Assembly (NCBI RefSeq): GCF_003704095.1
Contig: NW_020846078.1
Span: 248,001 to 312,000, forward strand
Reading direction: 5' to 3'
DNA: 64,000 nt
Origin: Pocillopora damicornis
Lineage: Eukaryota
The position numbers and the translations under genes are program-made. The notes beneath the pieces were generated by a model that worked only from the letters and a program-made list of their open reading frames with translations, had not been told where the DNA came from and searched no databases. Positions 7,736-17,383 of the stretch are shown here, in pieces. The first letter of the stretch is position 1. Every line of letters starts with the position of its first letter.

Positions 7736-10700
7736 ATGTCGAACTCATCCAATCAGCCCGCGTATCAACGTTTTGATACAGCAGAGATTCTGGCAGAATT
7801 CCTGGGTAAGATACTACAGAGATGTTAGTCAGTCTTTTGATCCCAGAATAACGATTTTATTTTACACAATAAAACCGTTATTGCAGTTCAGAGGCTGAGA
7901 AAAGGACAATATAAAGGGGAACATGGGTGCTTTTATCTCTTTTAGCTAATCGTATTTCCGTACTTATTTCCAAGCCAACTCCATCCCTCTGACATTTTTT
8001 TTCCTTGCCAATTGTGCGATATACCTCATGTAGAGGATTATTTAGCCCTCTACAGAGATTCTGATGGTCGTCAAGCTGCATAATCGAGTTTATTCGCTAT
8101 GCCATGTGAGGCTGTAGCTTGAAATCTTCATTTCAAAACTGGGACTATTCCTTCGAGAAGATGAAAAACGACGGCTGAAGTAAATATGTTAATTACATCA
8201 TAATTTGTGTTTCAAGCCTTTAACCAACAAAACTGGACAGTGTTTCATTTAGCTGTTTCGTTTTGCTCTCTTGCATTCAGCATTGAACCAGGCACTTTTT
8301 CCTATGGAGTTCAGGTATAGGGCCCGAGTCTAGTTTCACGAAAGCGAGGCTAGTTAGGCCGTTGACCAATGAAAGCTCAAGGCTTTACTACACGTGACGT
8401 GATTGGCTGCTGCGACTGACGTGATAGCACTGTTTCTTCGAACTATGACAATACTAAAATATGATTAATTCAATGATGTCTTCCATAGTTTTTGTAGCGG
8501 TTCGAAAGTCGACAGTAAACATCTTAAAGCTTTCTATTCGTGACTTGTATTATTATTCGGTTTGACATTTACACCCAAATATCCGTCACTGGATTTCAAA
8601 CTCTGGATCATTAGTTTAGCTTTGGATTTAAAGGGTGTAGAACGGAAAACAATGAAAAACCTCTGCATGGCTTTAGGTCAGTGGAGGAAATTGGCTGAAA
8701 GGTGCCATTTTTTGCTCACCCTGCTTTCTTGTCCTTTCCGTTAATAGCCGGAGAGTCTGGTACAAAACGAAGGCTGGTTAAAGAAGAAGGCTGAAAATTA
8801 GTGTAAAGTCAATATTAATGCTCGATTCGAAGTGAGCTACCGATAAAGTCAACTATGAGACATAGATATGTAACCATATTTTTTGGAACAGATAGGAATA
8901 ATATATTATTTGTACGGATGTAAAAGTATGAGGGGAATTTATTCTTAACTATTGTTGATTATTTTTACCAACTGTCCATGATATCTTTTTTTTATTCTCA
9001 TTTTAGACTCTCCTTCGGATCATCATAACTTGGTTACTACGGACTCTAGCCCTGTTGTATCGCCCAACTTTCTATCACAGCTAGTAATGCATAATGAACC
9101 ACAATACCTCAACCCCCTTCAGCCTGGTTGCCCCTCACCGCCAGACAGCGAAAGAACAAACACACCTTCTCCCTTTGCAACTCACACCGTTCAAACACAC
9201 AATACCCTCCCAGATGGGAACTTCGTTTGCGAACCCCTTATTCCGAGTGCTGGACCGTCCGGTGCGGATTTACGAGCGCCTTGTCAGTACCAGACTTTCA
9301 GCCTTCCGCGTGATCGTGTAGGAGGAACCAATTTTGTCCGATACTCAGATAGAAGAGTTCAGGTGACCCATGCCCATTGCAATGAAGCGAATATCAAGAT
9401 CCTTAATCCGCGGGCAGAATACGACAAAGTGCAGAGAAAGCACGGACATAGAGGGAAATTTTCAGAGCAAAGAGTAGCAAAAGGAAAGGTAGGGCTGAAG
9501 CCTTTTCTCGCGACAGTGCAAACCTGAGATTTGTTTTTTGATCGATCAAAAACTACAATCTGATTGGGTATGCTACTCGCTATCTATTACGTGGTAGATA
9601 GTGGGTAAATTAAGTGAGTAGAATAACGGTGTGCGGTTATAGACAAAATTAAAATAAAACCACGGCCCTGTCTCCTTGTTAAGTTTTAAACAAACAGCAG
9701 ACTTGAATACTATAACAAGTACTTTTTTCTGGTGATTTCTATTTTTTTTTCAGGCTTCGTCCTCGTTAGCTATTTAGCAATAGAAATCTCGAGTTGATGA
9801 GTTAATTGTTTTGAAAATATGCAGTGGTAAAAATTGTTGCCAAGCACTGTTTCAATTTTTTTGATAACAAGCTTGACAATTCTGGCTCAATGTGGCTCTC
9901 AATAAGTTCTTTTTAGGGTTCATTTTTGGCTGATTTCAGGTTGAGATGGAAATAGACACACAGCTGCCTCTTCGTCAACTAGAAGTTTATGTGTTGCGTG
10001 ATTTTGAAGCTGAAAAGAAGCTCTACAGTAAAGACCCAAAAGCATACGGAGTAGGAGAGATACGATTTCCTGAGAAGGATGTCCAAGAAATGAATACTCT
10101 TGGTACGTACAGATCAGTAACTACCGCGCCAAATGCTTTGCAAATACAGGGGCGAAATTTATTGAGATCCTTGATTGCTTATTTCGGTCAAAAATCGACT
10201 GAGTTAGAGTACTCAATTCTCCATCGATGAATTATCCCAAAAGTTACTCTTTCCCTGATCTCTCGGGTGAAACTCGCACATTGCCTCTTGGATGAAGAAT
10301 GAACAAAAATCTCATGGGTAATCTGCAGTAGTAAATTTGTAGCATAGCATTGGATATTTTCAAGGAGATCCCTCAGGTATTTGGAAATATTGTTAATCAA
10401 AGTTATCTAAAATGACTGAATATGGTTTATCTTAAGAATGAGGAGTCTACGGGGGATTCAGGCGTAGTGCTGTACCTTGTTTTCTCGCATTCTGTATGGA
10501 TCCACTTTTGGTTCTACTTTTGCTTCCGATTGGTTGAGTGGGTTAAGCAAGGGTCCTTAACTGATCAATGATAGTTGAAAAGCAAAACCAATGCGATCTC
10601 GCATTATATGAAAATTACTGTACTGGTGGTGGTGAAAAGGCTTCAATATGTAAATCTTAAAACATTTTCTCTCAGGTCAAAACTCCAAGTACGTTTGCAA

Positions 10701-13700
10701 AATCGACCTTGACTCCGTGTACAAAACAGAGGATGGTAGGGAGATTTACCGACTGGAAAAGACGAGAGGCTTAGAATTCAACCGATTCTTTCTAAAAGTC
10801 TTCCTCGAGTTAAACAATGGACAGAAGTTGGTCCTTTTCCCTTATGAGTTTGTACTAAAGAGCAGCAAGACCGTGAAAGGTAAGCACATGGATCCCCTAA
10901 GATTTCTTACAGCACCATACGCAGCATTAGTGTAAGCATCAAATAATATCTATTTACCTCTTGGAAATGTAGGAGGTAAATGTTAATAGTGATGATAATC
11001 GTAAGATCGTGATGTTTCCTCAGTCAGTGATGCAGTCATACTTAGAATAATGAAATTCGCGATACTTCCAACTGAAGTCAAATTTGAGACCACCTGATTC
11101 CAAGTAATTCTTTTACTTTAGAGCGCTTTTCGATTAAGTGCCGTAAAATTAAGAGCAAAGAAATCACAGCAGCAAATCAGAGCAAATTAAGGAAGAAGTT
11201 ACCAGAGCCTTCGAGAACTAAACATGAAGAAAAAACAGCGCGGAAAACGCGAGTTGTTGAGACGCCGTTGGTTCTAGTTTTGCATTTGATTGGTTGAGAA
11301 AATGGCGCAAATTTTCTGGACCAATCACAAAGAGAAGTACAACAAAACGTATGCAATCCTGACTTTTTTTTGACACTCAATTGATTTAGCATTGGGTTGC
11401 GGGAAACTCCCGACAGCTTGGCGTGTAAACTTGGTTTTCGCCACAAACATTTCGCACGTATACCAACCATTCTGTCATGACTTGAATGTAGACGTGATGC
11501 TTTTATATCAGTGATGCAATTGAAGATGATGCCTTTTGTTAAGCTTACTGTTCAGATGAAAGTTTTGATAGTGTGGGTTCACTCAATCGAACTTCCAAGG
11601 TTCTTGAAGTGAAAATTACCTTTGGTAGTAACTGATGTTGAAAAAAAACATCATTTTGCAATAGTTATTTCTTTCTTTGTGTGATAAAAGTTAAATTTGA
11701 TGGTAAAAGTGGGGTATTCGAATATTAAAGTGATGCGAGGGAGTTTTAGAATTCCTGAAGAGTATCCCTTAAAAGTATCAGTGTTTATGTATGCATCCTA
11801 GGAAAAGATGTATATTACCAACGGGTGTTACCCAATGCGTTGAAAATTTTGGATTGCGGTAACAACTGTTTCGTTGCTCACTCTTGTGTTACTGTAGACA
11901 CCACAAATGATACCAAAACCCTCATTTAAGCCCTTTGAAGATACGCTGATCACCTCTCCCGCGTTTAAAGTAGTTTTAATTCAATTCTATTTCAAAAGTT
12001 CCGAGGGAACCTCAAAATGTCCTCTCACCTCAAACAGCTTGCTCTTTAACCTCTCCTCGTCAAGGTCCTCCAGGTAAGAATGACCTAATTGTTAACGATT
12101 TTACGTCTCTAGTTACCTATAAGCTTAAAACATTTGATCATTATATCGGGGATATCTCGACGTATGGATAGTGAGGAGACGAGTACGAAAATCTTGAGCG
12201 AGAGCCATTTTCCGATATGATCTTTTCGTTAGAGGTGATGGCTCGAGAAAGATCGTGGAGTTATGTTTGAACTTAGGAATACTATTTCGTTTTAGAAATT
12301 TTTCCTGTAGTCACTAGAGTACTGAGGAGCATTTCATCGCCTGATGTGAGTCCTAACGTTTAACTTGGTCATTCATCACAGCTTTTTGGCCAGGAGTGTG
12401 ATAACCTGAGCTTTAGAGCTGGGGCATACTGAAGTTTCTTATTGATCTTACTCTTAGCCTCCAGATGAACTAGTGTCTTGAGACGTATTCGGAGAAAGCG
12501 AGACACCAAAAGGCGATCGGAGTCAGTTTTGCATTTGATTGGTCTAATATGAAACATGCGGTTTCAAAAGAGTTACTTTCGACGCTCCTTTGAGACGAGT
12601 AGTTTTTCCAAAGCTTAAGCTGAAGAACTGACCTTTTCCACCGTTCATTGAATCAAAATTACTTTGTGATTTATTTTCACGATTCCTACAGATAGCCGGT
12701 ATGAAAGCTTTATATGCCAACAAATCGAAGCGGATATAGCTAAGATAAAAGACCTCGAAGTTGAACAGATAAAAACAGCGAACCACGACATCGCTTACTA
12801 CGTCAAACGGCAGAATGAAAGTCAATTTGAGGAAGGTGACGTGGTGGGATTCTTTGAAAGAAAAACAGGAGGCACTGTTATCGATTTCTTGACCAGTGAT
12901 AATGCTCATGAAGCCCGGCTGGCTGGTGTAATAAGTAGGTCAGCGTACCTAGTCGGGAACACAGGGCAATATGACGAAGAAGAAGATGGTAAGTAACGGT
13001 TGTTGCATGTCGTGCAAACATAATCGATAGTTCGAATTTATAAAAAGGATCGGGTAAGCATCAGTGATTGTTCTCTATATACTTAAAGTAACTACGAAAC
13101 CCAACATTTTAGCAACGAAAGTCGCTTTTATGGATGTACAAGACTATGAAGGCTTAAATTCCATGGCCTTTTCTAGTCGCCTGTTTTTGTTCTTGGGATC
13201 GTGCTATACGTATGTTTTAAAAGGGTTGTTTTACCTTGTCTTTTTATTTTTAATTTAAACCTAGATATTTGTGATATTTTTCTTTGGCCATGTGAACGTA
13301 AGGGTGGGGGGGAAGGGACGGTCTAAGATCCCCCTGGAACCCATTTGATTTCCCAAACCCCCCCTCCAGCCGATGAATAACAACCGGTCCCTAACTCTGT
13401 ATCTTTGTAACACTCAGATGCTGATCTTGTGTGCATCATCGGACAGATTAAAGTGAAAGTCATTGGCGAAGTGACACCTGGACAACTGGTTTACGCTTGC
13501 CCCAGTAATAAGTTCCCAGGGGTGGCAATTGCCACACCAGAACAAGGTAAAAACAAATTGATATAATTAACACAGAGATATAGTTGGGTTTGTCTGTACA
13601 GTTACAGGTTCTATCAGCTCAGTGCCACTTGAAAAACCAACAACATCGTATTTTATCTCTGTGTGAGGGTATAGACAATGGAGATTACCCCGCCACCTTT

Positions 13701-16700
13701 TGGAGAGCTATCTAGACAGTGAAGAGGAATTTGAATCCGAGAAAAAAATTTTGGAGAAGAATTTATATTAATTCCTTCACCACATTCATAGTTATGCCTG
13801 GTTCATACACCATCATAAATTACATTTTTGTATCACTTTTTCTTGATTCAAAGAAAACTGTGCAATTGGCTACCGCCTAGCTACAATTTTAATCGCACAA
13901 TTTATAATTCTGGAAGGTGCTCCGGCGAACTTTTTAACAAAAAGATTCCATATTGCTGCGAGTCTGTTGAGCAATAGATCAAAGATGGTGTCTAAATGTT
14001 GTAAGAACCAAAAGGTGGCACACAGGACACAGCTGGGTGTGTCACTGATGTTCTTTCCACATAATGACGTTTTCTGTGGTCTGTTACTGAACAAACCCAC
14101 GTTAATATCGAATCTCTTTGTTTTAAATACTAACGGAGCAAAAAGTAGTTTATGGTGACGTCATCTATGACGTTGTCCTCCAATAGATCATGGGTAAGAA
14201 CCAATCAAAATGCGTGAATGATTGACCTTATTATATAATTCGTATTACATAGGTCAAAGTCTTCACTGGTTTTTTTTTTATCTTCTTTGATACAATACCA
14301 ACCAAACTAAGGATGTAATTATGAAACGAACGTTAATTCGTTTAATTTGTCTCACGATGAAAGAGTCAGGCTAATCAATCGTGTATTGATCGTAATTGAT
14401 ACACGATTAAAGAGGTCAAGATTAACCAGCCTGACCTTACATCGTGAGACAAACTATTGAACGTTCATTGATCTTGAAATTACGATGAACGACAACCTTT
14501 TTTGATGTAACATCTCTTTGATTCCCTTTTTTTCATTTAGGAGACGATCGACGAACCTTGATCGGCTATGCTATGGGTGGATCGTCTGGTCCTGGGGTTT
14601 CCAAGGTGGACTGCATTGTGTCTTTAGTACTGAGCATCGGTGCGCAGGAGCAGTTACGAGCGTTGGATCAAATGAGACTAAGTATCGAGGAAGTGAGGGA
14701 AAACCTGTACACTAGTATAGATACGGTTGGTTTTAGAATTGCAAGAATGCAAAGAGGCTGGAGAGGTAAGAGGTGTAGAAGAGATAGAGTGAAATAAACG
14801 ATCCAGGGCTCCTTATGTCACCATTAAAATTATTTTTCAGAGACAACTACTTTGATAAGTTTAGGATGAATTCTAGAACGTCGCCAACGCCTGCACTTGT
14901 TTTCTTTAACGGTGTTCTTCGCTTTTTTTTTCTCTTTGATTGACGCCAATTGCAAATGACATACTTACGAAATTTGGGCTGAATTTTCAAGATGCACAAT
15001 TTCTCGTGTAGTTCATTCCTAAAACAGTCAACTAAGGGTGGTGTTATAAGATGACATGTAACAATGTCCTGTGACCTCTTTCTGGGGACACGCAAAAATG
15101 TTTGGGAATGCTGTTAAATTAGGTATCCAAGGGTATATTATAGTTAAACAGTGACGAAATTCCACTGAACACGACTTCAGCTGACGTGAAGTCTGAGATG
15201 TCTGGAACTTTTGATAACAGGACACCACTTGTTCAACATCGCAGTACAAACCTAATTATACTTAAAGATGATTGGATTCGATTTTTCCATGATAGCATCT
15301 CATGGTGAGGTCCCTTCTAGTCTCTGAAAAGACTCTCCTCTCTTGTTTTAAAACTACTGCCACTACAGATGACGTTTCTACCACATGGCAGGGAACTATC
15401 TTAGTATATAGATATTAACCCTTTAACTCTCAGAGGTGATTAACTTATAACTTCTCCCTATAATATCCATACATTATCCAGCGAACTGGTCGTGAGAATA
15501 CTCAGGCTTATCAGGTACGAGATATTATAATGATCCAACGCCGAATTCTTGTAACAAATTTACAACGAAATGTGTAGCAGCCAGAGGGGAGAATTGACAA
15601 TCCAATTTTGGGAGTTAAAGGGTTAACAAAATATCTGAATGAGTGCGAGAAAGAAGTAGTTGTACGCTTGGCACCATTCAGAGTTCGGACAATGACACCA
15701 ATGCATAATGTTGTATTTTTTCATTTTTTAGGGTTGTGGAAAAAACTGCTTGCAGTAACTGTATTCCTGGCAATCGCATCTGCCGTTTGTGCCCTGATGT
15801 TAGCTCCAAGTTCTCCATACGTCAAAGCCAAGTGCAGAGCTAATAGTATTAAAGGCCACTCGCTCACCTTTAAATTCTATCCTAAGGATTCGGACGTAAG
15901 AATTCTTTTTCTATTAGAGCGCTTTCCGATTTAGTGTCGCAGAATTAAAACGAAAGTGACCATAACAGCCAATCAGAGCGAAAGAAAATATTATAGGGAA
16001 CCAATCAGAATGAAAGTAAAAACAAGCTAAATGCCTAAAGCGCGGGGAAACGCGGTTTACTTCGCCGTGCGACTGGTCGTAAAAACTCGCATTTCCCTAT
16101 TAGCGCCTCTTATCAAATAAAATGATTACTCGTGTTTTCCCGCGTTGCAAGAAGTTTGCTCGTTTTTACTTTGAGATCTCAGTGGTTCCTTATGGCATTT
16201 TCCTTACACTGAATGTGTTTGGCCATTTTGGACCCTTTTTTGTGGCCTTTTCGAAGCTCAATCGAAATTCGCTCTGGAAAGAATTTATAATAATTGACTT
16301 AAATGAAAAATATTCCAAAATCACAAAGCTGGGTTGTCACGCGAGCTCGTTTGTCCTCGATTTTCGCAGGATCTTAAATCACGAAGCTAACAAACACAAT
16401 GATTTCAGTTGTTTCTCTAAATCTGACTTTTCTCTGTTTTGTTTCCAAGGACGAAGTTATTGTGAAAGGGTTGGAGTTTACATGGGAAAAGCTGAAAAAG
16501 AAATTAAGCCTGAGATTCGACAAAAAAAATGGAACAGGTAGGTATTTAAACATTTGATCTGCTCTTTTACTTTTCCCTCCGATTTACAGGATTGACCAGA
16601 ATGTTATTTCCTCTACCAATTTTAACACCCTGTTAAGCAAGCAGGTAAAGAGAATTATTAAACAGACCGTGCGGAAAGCTCCCTAATCCTGTGCTCAAGC

Positions 16701-17383
16701 CAACACTCGAATGTTGTGTTTATGTCTGGTTATTGAGCAAAAAGTTGGGTGAAACACGCTTAAACGTTGCAAAAAAATAAAAAATGGCTTAAGAGGAATA
16801 GATGAACGAAAAGGAAATTGGAGTTCCCTACTGAGCAATAATGGACCCTAACACTGTTTAGTTGTTGTTGTTTTNNNNNNNNNNNNNNNNNNNNNNNNNA
16901 TTGATGGCATTGCAACTGCTATTTCCATTATTATTTATAAATATTTTCAAAATGATCAACAAGAAACGAAAGATGAATTTTAACGAGGTTCTATTTAGTT
17001 CTGTTTGCTCCAAGCACTGACTTACGTTATCAAATTTGGTTGGAAATTCTGTTTCCAGTTCTGGTAAAAATTTTTCAAATGACCCCAAACACAACGTAAC
17101 CACATATAAGCTCTGTAATTTGTTGGATGTATTTCACGGGTTCTGGTAATAAACAGTAGGCTGTTGTAACTCTGCAGAGGAATACCGTTACTTTCTGAAC
17201 AAGATTCGCTGTGAAACCGGTGGAATTCGTTCTGTTGCATCATGGCTTGATCCGTCACCAGTGGAACCCAAGGTCAATGTGCTTGCCGTAGATCCTGCCT
17301 GTAAGGAGGTCTTCTACCACAGTCGGAAGGATGGGAAATGGCAACAGTACCAAGCTGTGGAAGACGTTCATTGTAATCATTAA
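7736..17383 (+). CDS. Uncharacterised ~700-aa single-pass membrane protein with a MYRF-like layout: putative DNA-binding beta-sandwich, Peptidase_G2-like chaperone domain, coiled coil, TM, luminal domain
   Basis: Eleven GT-AG exons join in one frame: 7736-7805, 9007-9488, 9940-10102, 10676-10879, 11999-12073, 12692-12988, 13418-13546, 14541-14765, 15732-15895, 16450-16537, 17178-17383 (2103 nt = 700 aa + TAA). Motifs: DIAYY...FEEGDVVGF...AGVISRSAYLVGN...VCIIGQIKVKVIGEVTPGQLVY...PGVA...IGYAM. TM segment LLAVTVFLAIASAVCALML. An acceptor at 7724 implies an upstream UTR exon (candidate donor at 5449/5450). The gene model is well supported; the function is inference. Confidence 0.85.
11120..11385. 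repeat. Interspersed repeat, CCAATC-rich family; partial relatives at ~10500-10620, 12490-12590, 15916-16273, 30850-31105, 38381-38508 and 41106-41233
   Basis: Recurrent motif tagagcgctttt...gaaaacgcgag...ttttgcatttgattggttgagaaaatggcgc...ggaccaatcac in several places. Confidence 0.7.
13932..14238. repeat. Interspersed repeat with internal inverted segments
   Basis: ttttaacaaaaagattc...gtctgttgagcaatagatca pairs imperfectly with tggtctgttactgaacaaac...gaatctctttgttttaaa; ends ccaatcaaaatgcgtgaat...ttattatataa. Confidence 0.5.
14328..14466. repeat. Nested inverted repeat (hairpin / fold-back MITE)
   Basis: Outer arm tttgtctcacgatgaaagagtcaggct pairs with agcctgaccttacatcgtgagacaaa; inner arm aatcgtgtatt pairs with gatacacgatt; gaacgtt/aacgttc at the ends. 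Confidence 0.75.
15415..15626. mobile_element. piggyBac-like MITE with intact TTAA flanks
   Basis: TTAA-CCCTTTAACTCTCA ... TGGGAGTTAAAGGG-TTAA: 14-bp TIR with one mismatch and TTAA on both sides. Confidence 0.85.

What the first reader, a model, noticed from the sequence alone, without database searches (positions are those of the whole stretch)
12692..14625. Phage tail-spike intramolecular chaperone (Peptidase_G2-like) domain domesticated in an intron-split animal gene
Seen: DIAYY, FEEGDVVGF, AGVISRSAYLVGN, VCIIGQIKVKVIGEVTPGQLVY, PGVAIA and IGYAM in order across exons 6-8. Known: the recalled pattern of the phi29 gp12-type C-terminal chaperone found on phage and bacterial fibres is DxAE...GxVV...GVIS..P...G...V.L.GQV.V.V.G.V..GD......G.A...IG.A. 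Inference: a horizontally acquired prokaryotic or phage module, old enough to have gained two spliceosomal introns. The introns and animal neighbours argue against contamination.
Basis: partly seen in the sequence, partly recalled or inferred. Interest (0 to 1): 0.85.

Follow-up and report, generated by a model that had tools for sequence, protein, structure and literature searches.

The report
Phage tail-fibre chaperone domain in coral
Three exons of a coral gene encode a domain whose predicted fold best matches the self-cleaving assembly chaperone at the end of a bacteriophage tail appendage; it sits just before a membrane anchor, much as in the animal factor MYRF, but the phage enzyme's catalytic glutamate is replaced by tyrosine.

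Summary
All quoted motifs lie in order in three + strand exons (12692-12988, 13418-13546, 14541-14765). RNA contigs from four studies show both introns spliced out.

The gene has 11 exons (7736-17383) and is near-identical to an "uncharacterized protein" of Pocillopora verrucosa. It belongs to a Cnidaria-wide family (corals, anemones, Nematostella, Hydra) with no Pfam family; this genome has six copies.

The predicted fold of residues 364-501 has phage phi29 gp12's C-terminal autochaperone (Peptidase_G2) as its best match among 48,161 solved chains: Z 12.6, rmsd 2.6 A, 115 residues, 23% identity. The match starts exactly at gp12's cleavage-site Asp. Phage capsid cement proteins follow. Sequence support is weak: hhalign P 3e-4 and 0.02 for the two halves, and the Pfam G2 model misses the family.

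The Asp is invariant, but the position aligned to gp12 Glu695 is Tyr in every family sequence checked. The closest non-cnidarian relatives, on marine metagenome contigs, keep Asp..Glu and are also followed by a membrane segment. A homotrimer is predicted (ipSAE 0.91, best control 0.00).

Most likely this is a captured viral trimerisation module in a type II membrane protein. Self-cleavage like MYRF is possible (about 0.3) but unproven. The scan had already noted this same stretch (s1-777619), not other DNA.

The parts
7736..17383 (+). Whole gene, 11 exons. Approximate exon HSP limits: 7736-7804, 9000-9500, 9937-10104, 10672-10878, 11997-12073, 12692-12988, 13418-13546, 14541-14765, 15732-15907, 16414-16536, 17168-17383 (includes stop).
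   Evidence: tblastn of P0092 (704 aa, P. verrucosa) on the window, 88-100% identity per exon. Stop at 17381-17383. RNA joints for exons 5-9. Limits of exons 2-4 and 10 come from HSPs only.
9000..10878 (+). Exons 2-4: disordered Pro/Ser-rich N-terminus (residues 1-139) and an Ig-like beta-sandwich (residues ~140-302).
   Evidence: AF2 model: pLDDT <50 for 1-139 and about 90 for 145-300. Best structural matches are generic Ig domains, Z<=8.1. No Pfam family.
12692..12786 (+). First part of exon 6: segment upstream of the Asp (residues ~332-363), predicted to form the inter-chain stalk of a trimer.
   Evidence: Helix 332-345 in the monomer model. Residues 333-363 of all three copies lie in the predicted interface.
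12787..12801 (+). DIAYY: D364 aligns to gp12 cleavage-site Asp692, and Y367 aligns to gp12 Glu695.
   Evidence: The structural alignment starts at 364 = 692. A joint MAFFT alignment gives the same pairing. All family sequences that include this region have D-[ILV]-[AG]-Y (94 counted by pattern plus 8 read by eye), against D..E in 121 of 121 G2 proteins.
12787..12988 (+). Rest of exon 6: first beta-tulip half of the domain (residues 364-430), with FEEGDVVGF and AGVISRSAYLVGN.
12989..13417 (+). Intron A (phase 1, GT..AG), inside the domain. Its position is shared by Nematostella, Hydra and the three paralogues mapped.
   Evidence: RNA joint in 4 of 4 runs. Exon limits of P0231, P0227, P0096, P0049 and P0078 on their own loci.
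13418..13546 (+). Exon 7: core of the second beta-tulip (residues 431-473), with VCIIGQIKVKVIGEV..PGQLVY and PGVAIA.
   Evidence: This is the best profile-profile match to G2 (gp12 792-831), P 2.9e-4, reached by 0 of 200 column shuffles.
13547..14540 (+). Intron B (phase 1, GT..AG). Shared with the Nematostella orthologue only. Holds a MITE-like inverted repeat at 14343-14456.
   Evidence: RNA joint in 4 of 4 runs.
14541..14623 (+). Start of exon 8: last strands of the domain (residues 474-501), with IGYAM and the VDCIVSLVL strand.
14624..14765 (+). Rest of exon 8: start of a long helix (residues 508-549), probably a coiled coil leading into the membrane.
   Evidence: AF2 helix 508-572.
15732..15907 (+). 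Exon 9: the single transmembrane segment (residues ~550-577) and the start of the C-terminal domain.
   Evidence: Kyte-Doolittle window of 19 reaches >=1.8 only at 550-577. The same single segment sits about 185 residues after the Asp in 25 of 25 members, and none has an N-terminal signal. RNA joint 14765|15732 in 2 of 4 runs.
16414..17383 (+). Exons 10-11: C-terminal domain (residues ~590-704) with four conserved Cys, presumed luminal or extracellular.
   Evidence: C583, C644 and C698 are invariant and C674 nearly so. pLDDT is about 88. Its fold was not searched on its own.

Best explanation
Exons 6-8 encode a tandem beta-tulip domain of the kind that forms the C-terminal autochaperone (D4, Peptidase_G2) of phage phi29 gp12-type tail appendages. 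It was captured from a virus or another microbe before the anthozoan-hydrozoan split. It now sits in a Cnidaria-wide family of type II single-pass membrane proteins. The layout is: disordered N-terminus, Ig-like sandwich, linker, short stalk, G2-like domain, long helix, membrane segment, Cys-containing outer domain.

Shown here: the exons, their splicing and transcription; the family and its range; the fold match; the conserved Asp and the Glu-to-Tyr change.

Inferred: three chains assemble through the stalk and the beta-tulips into a trimer held against the cytosolic face of the membrane, presenting three N-terminal Ig-like domains. Because the position of the G2 glutamate is Tyr in every cnidarian copy, I take the cnidarian domain to be mainly a trimerisation and assembly module, a pseudo-peptidase. 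I put this at about 0.55. Any release of the N-terminal part would then need another protease.
For: Fold: 3suc gives Z 12.7, rmsd 2.7 A, 119 aligned, 22% identity. 3gqh_A gives Z 12.6, rmsd 2.6 A, 115 aligned, 23% identity, and ranks first of 48,161 chains, with model 364-501 = gp12 692-854. BFVD gives 92 viral matches at E<=1e-3, the best at 1.4e-10, among them 'preneck appendage protein' and tail-fibre proteins.

Sequence: 12 columns are >=80% conserved and identical in both families, including D364=D692 and GVIS=GVIS. hhalign gives P 2.9e-4 for the C-terminal tulip (0 of 200 shuffles reach it) and P 0.02 for the N-terminal tulip (8 of 200).

Bridge: the marine contigs L076 and L078 match the coral domain at hhalign probability 99.2%, E 6e-20, and carry D-V-A-E-W. 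A domain-only model of L076 again has 3gqh_A first (Z 10.8, rmsd 3.0 A, 116 aligned, starting at the Asp). Only 18 of 48,161 chains reach Z>=5, and all are viral.

Trimer: ipSAE 0.91 in three runs against a best control of 0.00; contact agreement >=91%; partner pLDDT 84. The interface includes 333-363, I365 and Y367. This is a prediction only. gp12 D4 is a solved trimer, so the pass may partly reflect that likeness.

Topology: one hydrophobic segment and no signal peptide in 25 of 25 members.

Age and authenticity: spliced RNA, conserved intron A, and orthologues on chromosome-scale records of Nematostella and Hydra.

Glu to Tyr: every family sequence checked has Tyr, against Glu in 121 of 121 G2 proteins. 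gp12 D4 is described as a tandem beta-tulip autochaperone that drives trimerisation (bioRxiv 10.1101/216911).
Against: The Pfam PF11962 model gives no hit at E<=1 on the exons, on 25 family proteins or on the whole genome. PHROGs gives nothing. A family profile finds no solved relative by sequence.

Foldseek ranks phage cement proteins above gp12. Two members hit Pfam Phage_cement weakly (E 9e-4). For the L076 model the top four Z values are tied within 1.

No prokaryotic or phage relative was found by pattern scans, so the donor is unknown.

The pseudo-peptidase reading rests on one residue. The Asp and its neighbours stay invariant over more than 100 sequences, which could equally mean that a cleavage site is preserved. 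The role of gp12 Asp692 and Glu695 in catalysis is from my own knowledge (MEROPS G2; Xiang et al. 2009, Mol Cell); I could not open that paper here. No experiment exists for any family member.
Confidence: 0.55

Rival explanations
1. This is a self-cleaving membrane-tethered nuclear factor that works like MYRF. After trimerisation the domain cuts its own chain just before D364, using Tyr367 (perhaps with the nearly invariant Glu379) in place of the G2 glutamate. The N-terminal trimer (disordered region plus Ig-like domain) leaves the membrane for the nucleus.
For: The order of parts matches MYRF: low-complexity N-terminus, beta-sandwich domain, phage-type chaperone domain, membrane segment, Cys-containing C-terminal domain. 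For MYRF see PMC3742443 and PMC3742440. D364 is invariant and sits exactly at the structural equivalent of gp12's cleavage site. D-x-[AG] is shared with G2, and Gly is common at the preceding position in both families. Basic clusters that look like nuclear localisation signals lie in the linker upstream of the Asp in 15 of 25 members. The nearest outgroup proteins (L076, L078) have the full Asp..Glu pair followed by a membrane segment.
Against: The residue aligned to gp12 Glu695 is Tyr in all cnidarian copies, and no G2-type mechanism without Glu is known to me. The window's own orthologue group has no basic cluster in the linker. The N-terminal domain matches only generic Ig folds (Z<=8.1). 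It has no specific match to NDT80, p53 or Rel domains, and only a sub-threshold hit to LAG1-DNAbind in two members, located in P0102 (19 bits). DNA binding is untested.
Confidence: 0.3
2. The domain descends from a phage capsid cement or decoration protein (Pam3 gp6 / E217 gp24 type, Pfam Phage_cement), not from a tail-appendage G2 chaperone. The likeness to gp12 reflects only the shared tandem beta-tulip superfamily.
For: The Foldseek top hit is 8hdt_G for both models (E 2.7e-4 and 2.5e-4). Cement proteins score Z 8-11. PF22758 is the only phage Pfam family with any hit (2 of 25 members, best E 9e-4, 19.8 bits).
Against: gp12 D4 has the highest Z and the highest identity for both models (23% and 21%), and its match begins exactly at the Asp. 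The D-x-[AG]-[E/Y] start and the GVIS motif are shared with G2. The closest outgroup has the G2 Asp..Glu pair. The named BFVD top hits are tail-fibre and preneck appendage proteins. I had no cement-family alignment to compare, so this rival is not excluded.
Confidence: 0.1
3. There was no horizontal transfer. The beta-tulip domain is an old eukaryotic domain, or arose by convergence, and merely resembles viral proteins.
For: No donor was found. The nearest relatives outside Cnidaria are on GC-rich marine contigs that may be eukaryotic, and one of them (L079) looks interrupted.
Against: Among 48,161 solved chains every match with Z>=5 to the domain-only model is viral. The family was seen only in Cnidaria and on a few marine contigs in searches of billions of proteins. 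The motif-level identity with G2 argues against convergence.
Confidence: 0.04
4. The stretch is contaminant or mis-assembled microbial or phage DNA in the coral assembly.
For: None found.
Against: GT..AG introns are spliced out in poly-A RNA from four studies. There are six paralogous loci on three contigs. Orthologues carry the same intron on chromosome-scale Nematostella and Hydra records. Base composition is even at 35-40% GC across the window.
Confidence: 0.01

Closest known systems
phi29 gp12 C-terminal autochaperone (domain D4; Pfam PF11962 Peptidase_G2; PDB 3gqh, 3suc)
   Same: It is the best structural match (Z 12.6-12.7, 22-23% identity), running from the cleavage-site Asp to the C-terminal strand. 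The motif order is shared: D-x-A-[E/Y], G-x-x-V, GVIS, V-x-x-x-G-x-I-x-V-x-I, G-x-A. A trimer is predicted. The N-terminal cargo lies upstream of the Asp.
   Different: The Pfam model does not match. Glu695 is replaced by an invariant Tyr. The roughly 45-residue insert between the two tulips of gp12 is absent. There is no beta-helical fibre upstream. The domain is not at the protein's end but is followed by a helix, a membrane segment and a further domain. The host is an animal and the gene has introns.
MYRF (myelin regulatory factor), a membrane-bound transcription factor with a phage endosialidase-type ICA domain (Peptidase_S74)
   Same: Same logic and order of parts: N-terminal low-complexity region, beta-sandwich domain, phage-derived trimerising chaperone domain, single membrane segment, C-terminal domain on the far side. 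Both use a module otherwise found at the ends of phage fibres.
   Different: The chaperone fold and family are unrelated (tandem beta-tulip G2-like versus S74 with a Ser-Lys dyad). No NDT80 domain was detected. Cleavage, nuclear entry and DNA binding are all untested here. S74 domains occur elsewhere in this genome but not in this gene.
Phage capsid cement/decoration proteins (Pam3 gp6, E217 gp24, XM1, HFTV1, TW1; Pfam PF22758)
   Same: Same tandem beta-tulip fold (Z 8-11), and weak Pfam hits in two family members.
   Different: Those are free-standing proteins of about 150 residues on capsids. They show lower identity (9-19%) and no match to the Asp-start motif was seen here. None is joined to a membrane anchor.
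Marine metagenome proteins L076:328-3204 and L078:205-1290 (unnamed, organism unknown)
   Same: They are clear homologues of the coral domain (hhalign probability 99.2%, E 6e-20). In L076, whose frame is complete, the domain is followed directly by a membrane segment and a Cys-rich region.
   Different: They keep the G2-type Asp..Glu pair (D-V-A-E-W). Their N-terminal region is different. They have no long helix before the membrane. They are intronless GC-rich open frames.

Membership tests
Peptidase_G2 (PF11962 / MEROPS G2, phi29 gp12 type) | Match to the Pfam model above its gathering score (25 bits) | tested here: not met
   No hit at E<=10 on single exons. No hit at E<=1 on P0092 or on 25 family members. 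No hit in a six-frame search of the whole genome. gp12 itself scores 325 bits.
Peptidase_G2 (PF11962 / MEROPS G2, phi29 gp12 type) | Fold of the gp12 D4 fragment (tandem beta-tulip) | tested here: met
   3gqh_A: Z 12.6, rmsd 2.6 A, 115 aligned, first of 48,161 chains. 3suc: Z 12.7, rmsd 2.7 A, 119 aligned. The model is predicted, with pLDDT 70-86 in this domain.
Peptidase_G2 (PF11962 / MEROPS G2, phi29 gp12 type) | Profile-profile sequence similarity to G2 domains | tested here: inconclusive
   hhalign against 39 non-redundant G2 domains gives P 0.0015 over 34-36 columns, probability 17%. By halves: P 2.9e-4 and 0.02. With marine relatives added: P 3.9e-4. The matches are co-linear but below the usual confidence level.
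Peptidase_G2 (PF11962 / MEROPS G2, phi29 gp12 type) | Asp at the cleavage site (gp12 Asp692) | tested here: met
   D364 is invariant and aligns to D692 by structure and by sequence. Asp is present in 121 of 121 G2 proteins.
Peptidase_G2 (PF11962 / MEROPS G2, phi29 gp12 type) | Catalytic Glu three residues after the Asp (gp12 Glu695) | tested here: not met
   This position is Tyr in every family sequence that includes it, and in 54 cnidarian-type metagenome loci. It is Glu in 121 of 121 G2 proteins and in the three marine contigs L076, L078 and L079.
Peptidase_G2 (PF11962 / MEROPS G2, phi29 gp12 type) | Homotrimer formed by the domain | tested here: met
   Prediction only: ipSAE 0.91 against a best control of 0.00, three runs agreeing in >=91% of contacts, partner pLDDT 84. 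In the tool's calibration the mark was reached by 21 of 30 solved homomers and 0 of 23 solved single chains, calibrated on two copies rather than three. The pass may reflect likeness to the solved gp12 trimer.
Peptidase_G2 (PF11962 / MEROPS G2, phi29 gp12 type) | Autoproteolytic release of the domain after assembly | not testable with these tools
   Needs expression and immunoblot or mass spectrometry.
Peptidase_G2 (PF11962 / MEROPS G2, phi29 gp12 type) | Position at the C-terminal end of a beta-helical fibre or appendage protein | tested here: not met
   No pectate-lyase-type beta-helix lies upstream. A helix, a membrane segment and a further domain lie downstream.
MYRF-type membrane-bound transcription factor | NDT80/PhoG DNA-binding domain | tested here: not met
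   No Pfam hit in 25 members. Structure search of residues 148-302 gives only generic Ig-like matches, Z<=8.1. That domain was not folded and searched on its own.
MYRF-type membrane-bound transcription factor | Peptidase_S74 ICA domain | tested here: not met
   PF13884 has five matches in this genome, none in this gene or contig.
MYRF-type membrane-bound transcription factor | Chaperone domain followed by one membrane segment, with the N-terminus on the cytosolic side | tested here: met
   One hydrophobic segment lies about 185 residues after the Asp, and there is no signal peptide, in 25 of 25 members. Four conserved Cys occur only in the C-terminal domain. The orientation is inferred from these features, not measured.
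MYRF-type membrane-bound transcription factor | Self-cleavage, nuclear entry and DNA binding of the N-terminal trimer | not testable with these tools
   No experimental data found.
Phage_cement (PF22758) | Match to the Pfam model above its cut-off (27 bits) | tested here: not met
   The best score is 19.8 bits, E 9e-4, in 2 of 25 members.
Phage_cement (PF22758) | Shared fold | tested here: met
   7kmx_a: Z 11.0, rmsd 3.9 A, 122 aligned. 8hdt_G: Z 10.0, rmsd 2.8 A, 125 aligned.

The most novel reading that the evidence does not exclude
Cnidaria hold a whole family of membrane-tethered nuclear factors that are released by a Tyr-variant of the phage G2 autoprotease. That would be a second, independent capture of a phage fibre chaperone for regulated release from a membrane, beside MYRF's S74 domain. 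The marine relatives with an intact Asp..Glu pair next to a membrane segment would then mark a wider, unrecognised eukaryotic class of G2-tethered membrane proteins.
Probability: 0.25. Interest if true: 0.9.

Novelty: new variant of a known kind. Interest (0 to 1): 0.72.

Why it matters
MYRF is the textbook case of an animal protein that uses a bacteriophage tail-spike chaperone to trimerise and free itself from a membrane. It has stood alone.

This gene family puts a different phage fibre chaperone, of an unrelated fold and protease family, in the same place in the same kind of protein. It does so across a whole animal phylum, with several copies per genome. That suggests the viral 'fold, trimerise, let go' module has been recruited more than once by eukaryotes.

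It gives a directly testable question: does a G2-type domain with Tyr in place of Glu still cut? It offers model systems for the test (Nematostella, Hydra). It also assigns a first structural and mechanistic hypothesis to a set of cnidarian 'uncharacterized proteins' that have no Pfam family.

If the domain does not cut, it is still a clear example of a viral assembly domain kept for hundreds of millions of years as a pseudo-enzyme.

Tried and rejected
- Pfam on each exon and on paralogue exons found nothing above noise.
- PHROGs on 25 members found nothing.
- PDB sequence search with exon 6 and with the family profile found nothing.
- hhalign of the family against gp12 as a single sequence gave only E 0.36. 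The global hhalign mode failed.
- Pattern scans with tblastn confirmation found no relative in IMG/VR, or in GTDB genomes with the family alignment or with P0069.
- The search for homologous proteins on P0069 returned only a Nematostella protein.
- Neighbours of P0069 on TARA contig L008 have no Pfam family, so its organism stays unknown.
- The dinoflagellate spliced-leader motif is absent from all fetched loci.
- The ESM Atlas on the N-terminal part of L076 gave scores <=0.82, which is noise. The first Atlas call (bacterial and viral clusters at 0.91-0.93, a Peptidase_G2 cluster at 0.89) was used only as a lead.
- I could not open Xiang et al. 2009, and the phi29 virion paper has no text on cleavage.
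- The N-terminal domain as an NDT80, p53 or Rel type DNA-binding domain is not supported by the structure lists.
- The RNA joint reported as 12064>12683 with GT..GA ends is an aligner shift caused by two similar 9-mers. The sequence fits 12073|12692 with GT..AG.
- Left out by instruction: joining the exons into one typed protein. Exons were searched one by one by reference, and the database protein P0092 stood in for the spliced product.
- A tree of cnidarian, marine, phage and bacterial domains was not built, because identity to G2 (about 20%) is too low for a meaningful one.
- The run of N near 16860-16890, in the intron before the last exon, was left untouched.

Full report
**What is in the sequence.**
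On the + strand, three exons read in one frame each. They are 12692-12988, 13418-13546 and 14541-14765. Each junction is phase 1 with GT..AG.

Each exon was searched by reference. For the spliced product I used a database protein, P0092 (704 aa, 'uncharacterized protein [Pocillopora verrucosa]'). It lies on the window in 11 pieces from 7736 to 17383, at 88-100% identity per exon (98% in exon 6, 100% in exon 8).

RNA contigs from four separate poly-A, oligo-dT or cDNA studies carry the joints 12988|13418 and 13546|14541. A joint reported as 12064>12683 with odd ends is an aligner shift between two similar 9-mers. The sequence fits 12073|12692. The run of N in the intron before the last exon was left untouched.

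**The family.**
Exon 6 alone finds five more loci in the same 234-Mb genome: two on contig C2374 and three on C1007, at 40-47% identity. It also finds 86 proteins at E<=1e-3 among 1.84 billion.

The named full-length relatives are all 'uncharacterized' cnidarian proteins. They come from Montipora, Pocillopora, Oculina, Porites, Actinia, Exaiptasia, Nematostella and Hydra vulgaris. None has a Pfam family.

In 25 aligned members, these domain residues are invariant: D364, I365, Y367, G380, V382, L398, G410, V411, I412, R414, S415, C436, G439, G447, V449, G465, A467, G482 and V496.

Every member has one strongly hydrophobic segment about 185 residues after the Asp, and none has an N-terminal signal. 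Four conserved cysteines occur only after that segment. The N-terminal parts, including the domain in question, should therefore be cytosolic. This orientation is inferred.

**Introns.**
The intron after residue 430 (12989-13417) is at the same place in the Nematostella orthologue, in a Hydra member and in the three Pocillopora paralogues I mapped. The second intron (13547-14540) is shared only with the Nematostella orthologue. Hydra has a different extra intron. The domain was therefore in the genome, and already split, before anthozoans and hydrozoans diverged. Contamination is excluded.

**What the domain is.**
An AlphaFold2 model of P0092, made with the family alignment, has four ordered parts:
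- 145-300: beta sandwich, pLDDT about 90.
- 364-501: beta-rich, pLDDT 70-86.
- 508-572: one long helix that includes the membrane segment.
- 590-700: pLDDT about 88.

An exhaustive comparison with 48,161 solved chains puts the phi29 gp12 C-terminal fragment first. 3gqh_A gives Z 12.6, rmsd 2.6 A, 115 aligned and 23% identity, with model 364-501 matching chain 692-854. The uncleaved gp12 structure, 3suc, gives Z 12.7, rmsd 2.7 A and 119 aligned. Every other match above Z 8 to this domain is a capsid cement or decoration protein of a phage or archaeal virus.

Foldseek agrees on the set but ranks the Pam3 cement protein first (E 2.7e-4; gp12 at 2.1e-3). Against predicted viral structures there are 92 matches at E<=1e-3. 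The best is 1.4e-10. The named ones are preneck appendage and tail-fibre proteins, plus one Marseillevirus protein.

gp12's D4 region is described as two tandem beta-tulip domains that act as an autochaperone for trimerisation. The same fold occurs in decoration proteins (bioRxiv 10.1101/216911). That explains the mixed list.

**Sequence-level link.**
This is weaker. The Pfam G2 model scores gp12 at 325 bits but finds nothing in the family or in the whole coral genome.

I cut the G2 domains from 120 relatives of gp12 and compared 39 non-redundant ones with the cnidarian domain by hhalign:
- Second tulip: P 2.9e-4, reached by 0 of 200 column shuffles.
- First tulip: P 0.02, reached by 8 of 200.
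- The two matches are co-linear.

A joint MAFFT alignment independently pairs D364 with D692, GVIS with GVIS, and ten further conserved columns. It also shows that gp12 has an extra insert of about 45 residues.

The start motif is D-[YFL]-[AG]-E-Y in 121 of 121 G2 proteins. It is D-[ILV]-[AG]-Y in every family sequence that includes the region.

**A bridge.**
A scan of JGI metagenomes gave 62 loci. Of the 57 loci that carry the motif, 54 have the cnidarian Tyr form. Three GC-rich marine contigs (L076, L078, L079) have D-[VF]-A-E-W, the G2 Asp..Glu pair.

L076 and L078 are unambiguous homologues of the coral domain: hhalign probability 99.2%, E 6e-20, 124 columns, with their Glu aligned to the coral Tyr.

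L076 is one 959-residue open frame in which the domain is followed at once by a hydrophobic segment and a Cys-rich region. It has no Pfam family.

A domain-only model of it (pLDDT 77.7, pTM 0.70) again has 3gqh_A first: Z 10.8, rmsd 3.0 A, 116 aligned, 21% identity, from the Asp to the end. The next three cement proteins lie within one Z unit. Only 18 of 48,161 chains reach Z 5, and all are viral.

A further relative, P0069, sits on a TARA contig. It has the Tyr form and no membrane segment. The organisms of these contigs are unknown.

**How it probably works.**
Three copies of residues 325-505 are predicted to form a trimer. The ipSAE is 0.91 in three runs, against a best control of 0.00. Contact agreement is at least 91% and partner pLDDT is 84. 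In the tool's calibration the mark was reached by 21 of 30 solved homomers and 0 of 23 single chains, calibrated on pairs rather than trimers.

The interface uses the segment 333-363 just upstream of the Asp, residues I365 and Y367, and faces of both tulips. This is a model's confidence, and it may echo the solved gp12 trimer.

From my own knowledge (MEROPS family G2; Xiang et al. 2009), gp12 cuts itself between Ser691 and Asp692 after trimerisation, and needs Asp692 and Glu695. I could not open that paper here.

The cnidarian proteins keep the Asp but have Tyr for the Glu, without exception. I therefore rate a stable trimerisation role without G2-type cutting as most likely, at about 0.55. 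I rate a MYRF-like self-release as the main rival, at about 0.3.

In favour of release:
- The MYRF-like order of parts.
- The invariance of the Asp at the exact cleavage-site position.
- Basic clusters that look like nuclear localisation signals in the linker of 15 of 25 members, though none in the window's own orthologue group.

Against a transcription-factor reading:
- The N-terminal sandwich matches only generic Ig domains (Z<=8.1).
- Its only specific hint is a sub-threshold hit to LAG1-DNAbind in two members, located in P0102.
- That domain and the C-terminal domain were not folded alone, so I make no claim that they are new folds.

**Comparison with what is known.**
The domain works like, and very probably shares ancestry with, the G2 autochaperone. 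It fails two membership tests, the Pfam model and the catalytic Glu, and it stands in a quite different protein.

The protein as a whole resembles MYRF in layout. It shares neither MYRF's DNA-binding domain nor its S74 chaperone. S74 domains do occur elsewhere in this genome.

I found no paper on Peptidase_G2 or beta-tulip domains in animals, or on this family. A 2026 survey of membrane-bound transcription regulators does not mention it in the passages found (PMC13294678).

Earlier notes of this scan on the same stretch proposed the MYRF layout (s1-777619) and the Glu-to-Tyr change (s1-777698). I tested the second fully and the first in part.

**Verdict.**
This is a new variant of a known kind. 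Function is unproven, and the decisive test is a simple cleavage assay.

Noticed in passing
window 15431-15630 (intron 8): A dispersed repeat of about 200 bp. Forty copies were scored at 82-86% identity, out of 3,234 first-look candidates in this genome. It explains RNA contig depth above 1,000 at 15436-15707.
   Followed up: partly
window 14343-14456 (intron 7): Two 21-nt inverted arms, 90% complementary and 72 nt apart, which looks like a miniature inverted-repeat element. RNA contigs with loose ends at 14174-14183 suggest another repeat nearby.
   Followed up: partly
L012:1354-3132:- (G000:C4052); also L014, L015 and a third S74 match on G000:C464: An intronless 593-aa open frame joins a guanylate-binding-protein-type GTPase domain to a Peptidase_S74 (endosialidase chaperone) domain. 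Three S74 matches lie within 7 kb on C464, two of them in long open frames. This is a second kind of phage fibre chaperone domain in the same coral genome, outside MYRF.
   Followed up: partly
L076:328-3204:+, L078:205-1290:+, L079 (JGI marine metagenome contigs): GC-rich marine contigs encode the closest non-cnidarian relatives of the domain, with the canonical G2 Asp..Glu pair. In L076 a membrane segment and a Cys-rich region follow. The three share an N-terminal region with no Pfam family (a G-D-x-W-K-x-x-G-G motif in L076 and L078, only loosely similar in L079). The organism is unknown.
   Followed up: partly
L008:1792-3276:+ (TARA Oceans metagenome scaffold): P0069 (494 aa) carries the Tyr form of the domain (DVAYY), then a coiled coil and an unrelated C-terminal domain, with no membrane segment. 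Its start overlaps the upstream frame by 4 bases. GC is 56-61%. The neighbours have no Pfam family.
   Followed up: partly
window 14766-15731 (intron 8) in run X3: One RNA contig of run X3 runs on from exon 8 into the intron (14539-14999 and 15045-15596, skipping 45 bases). This is either intron retention or DNA carry-over. The other runs show the spliced form.
   Followed up: no
P0047 (235 aa, database fragment, Hydra-like): A gene model fuses a Tc3-transposase-type helix-turn-helix (Pfam E 3e-4) to the G2-like domain. This is probably a chimeric prediction next to a transposon.
   Followed up: no
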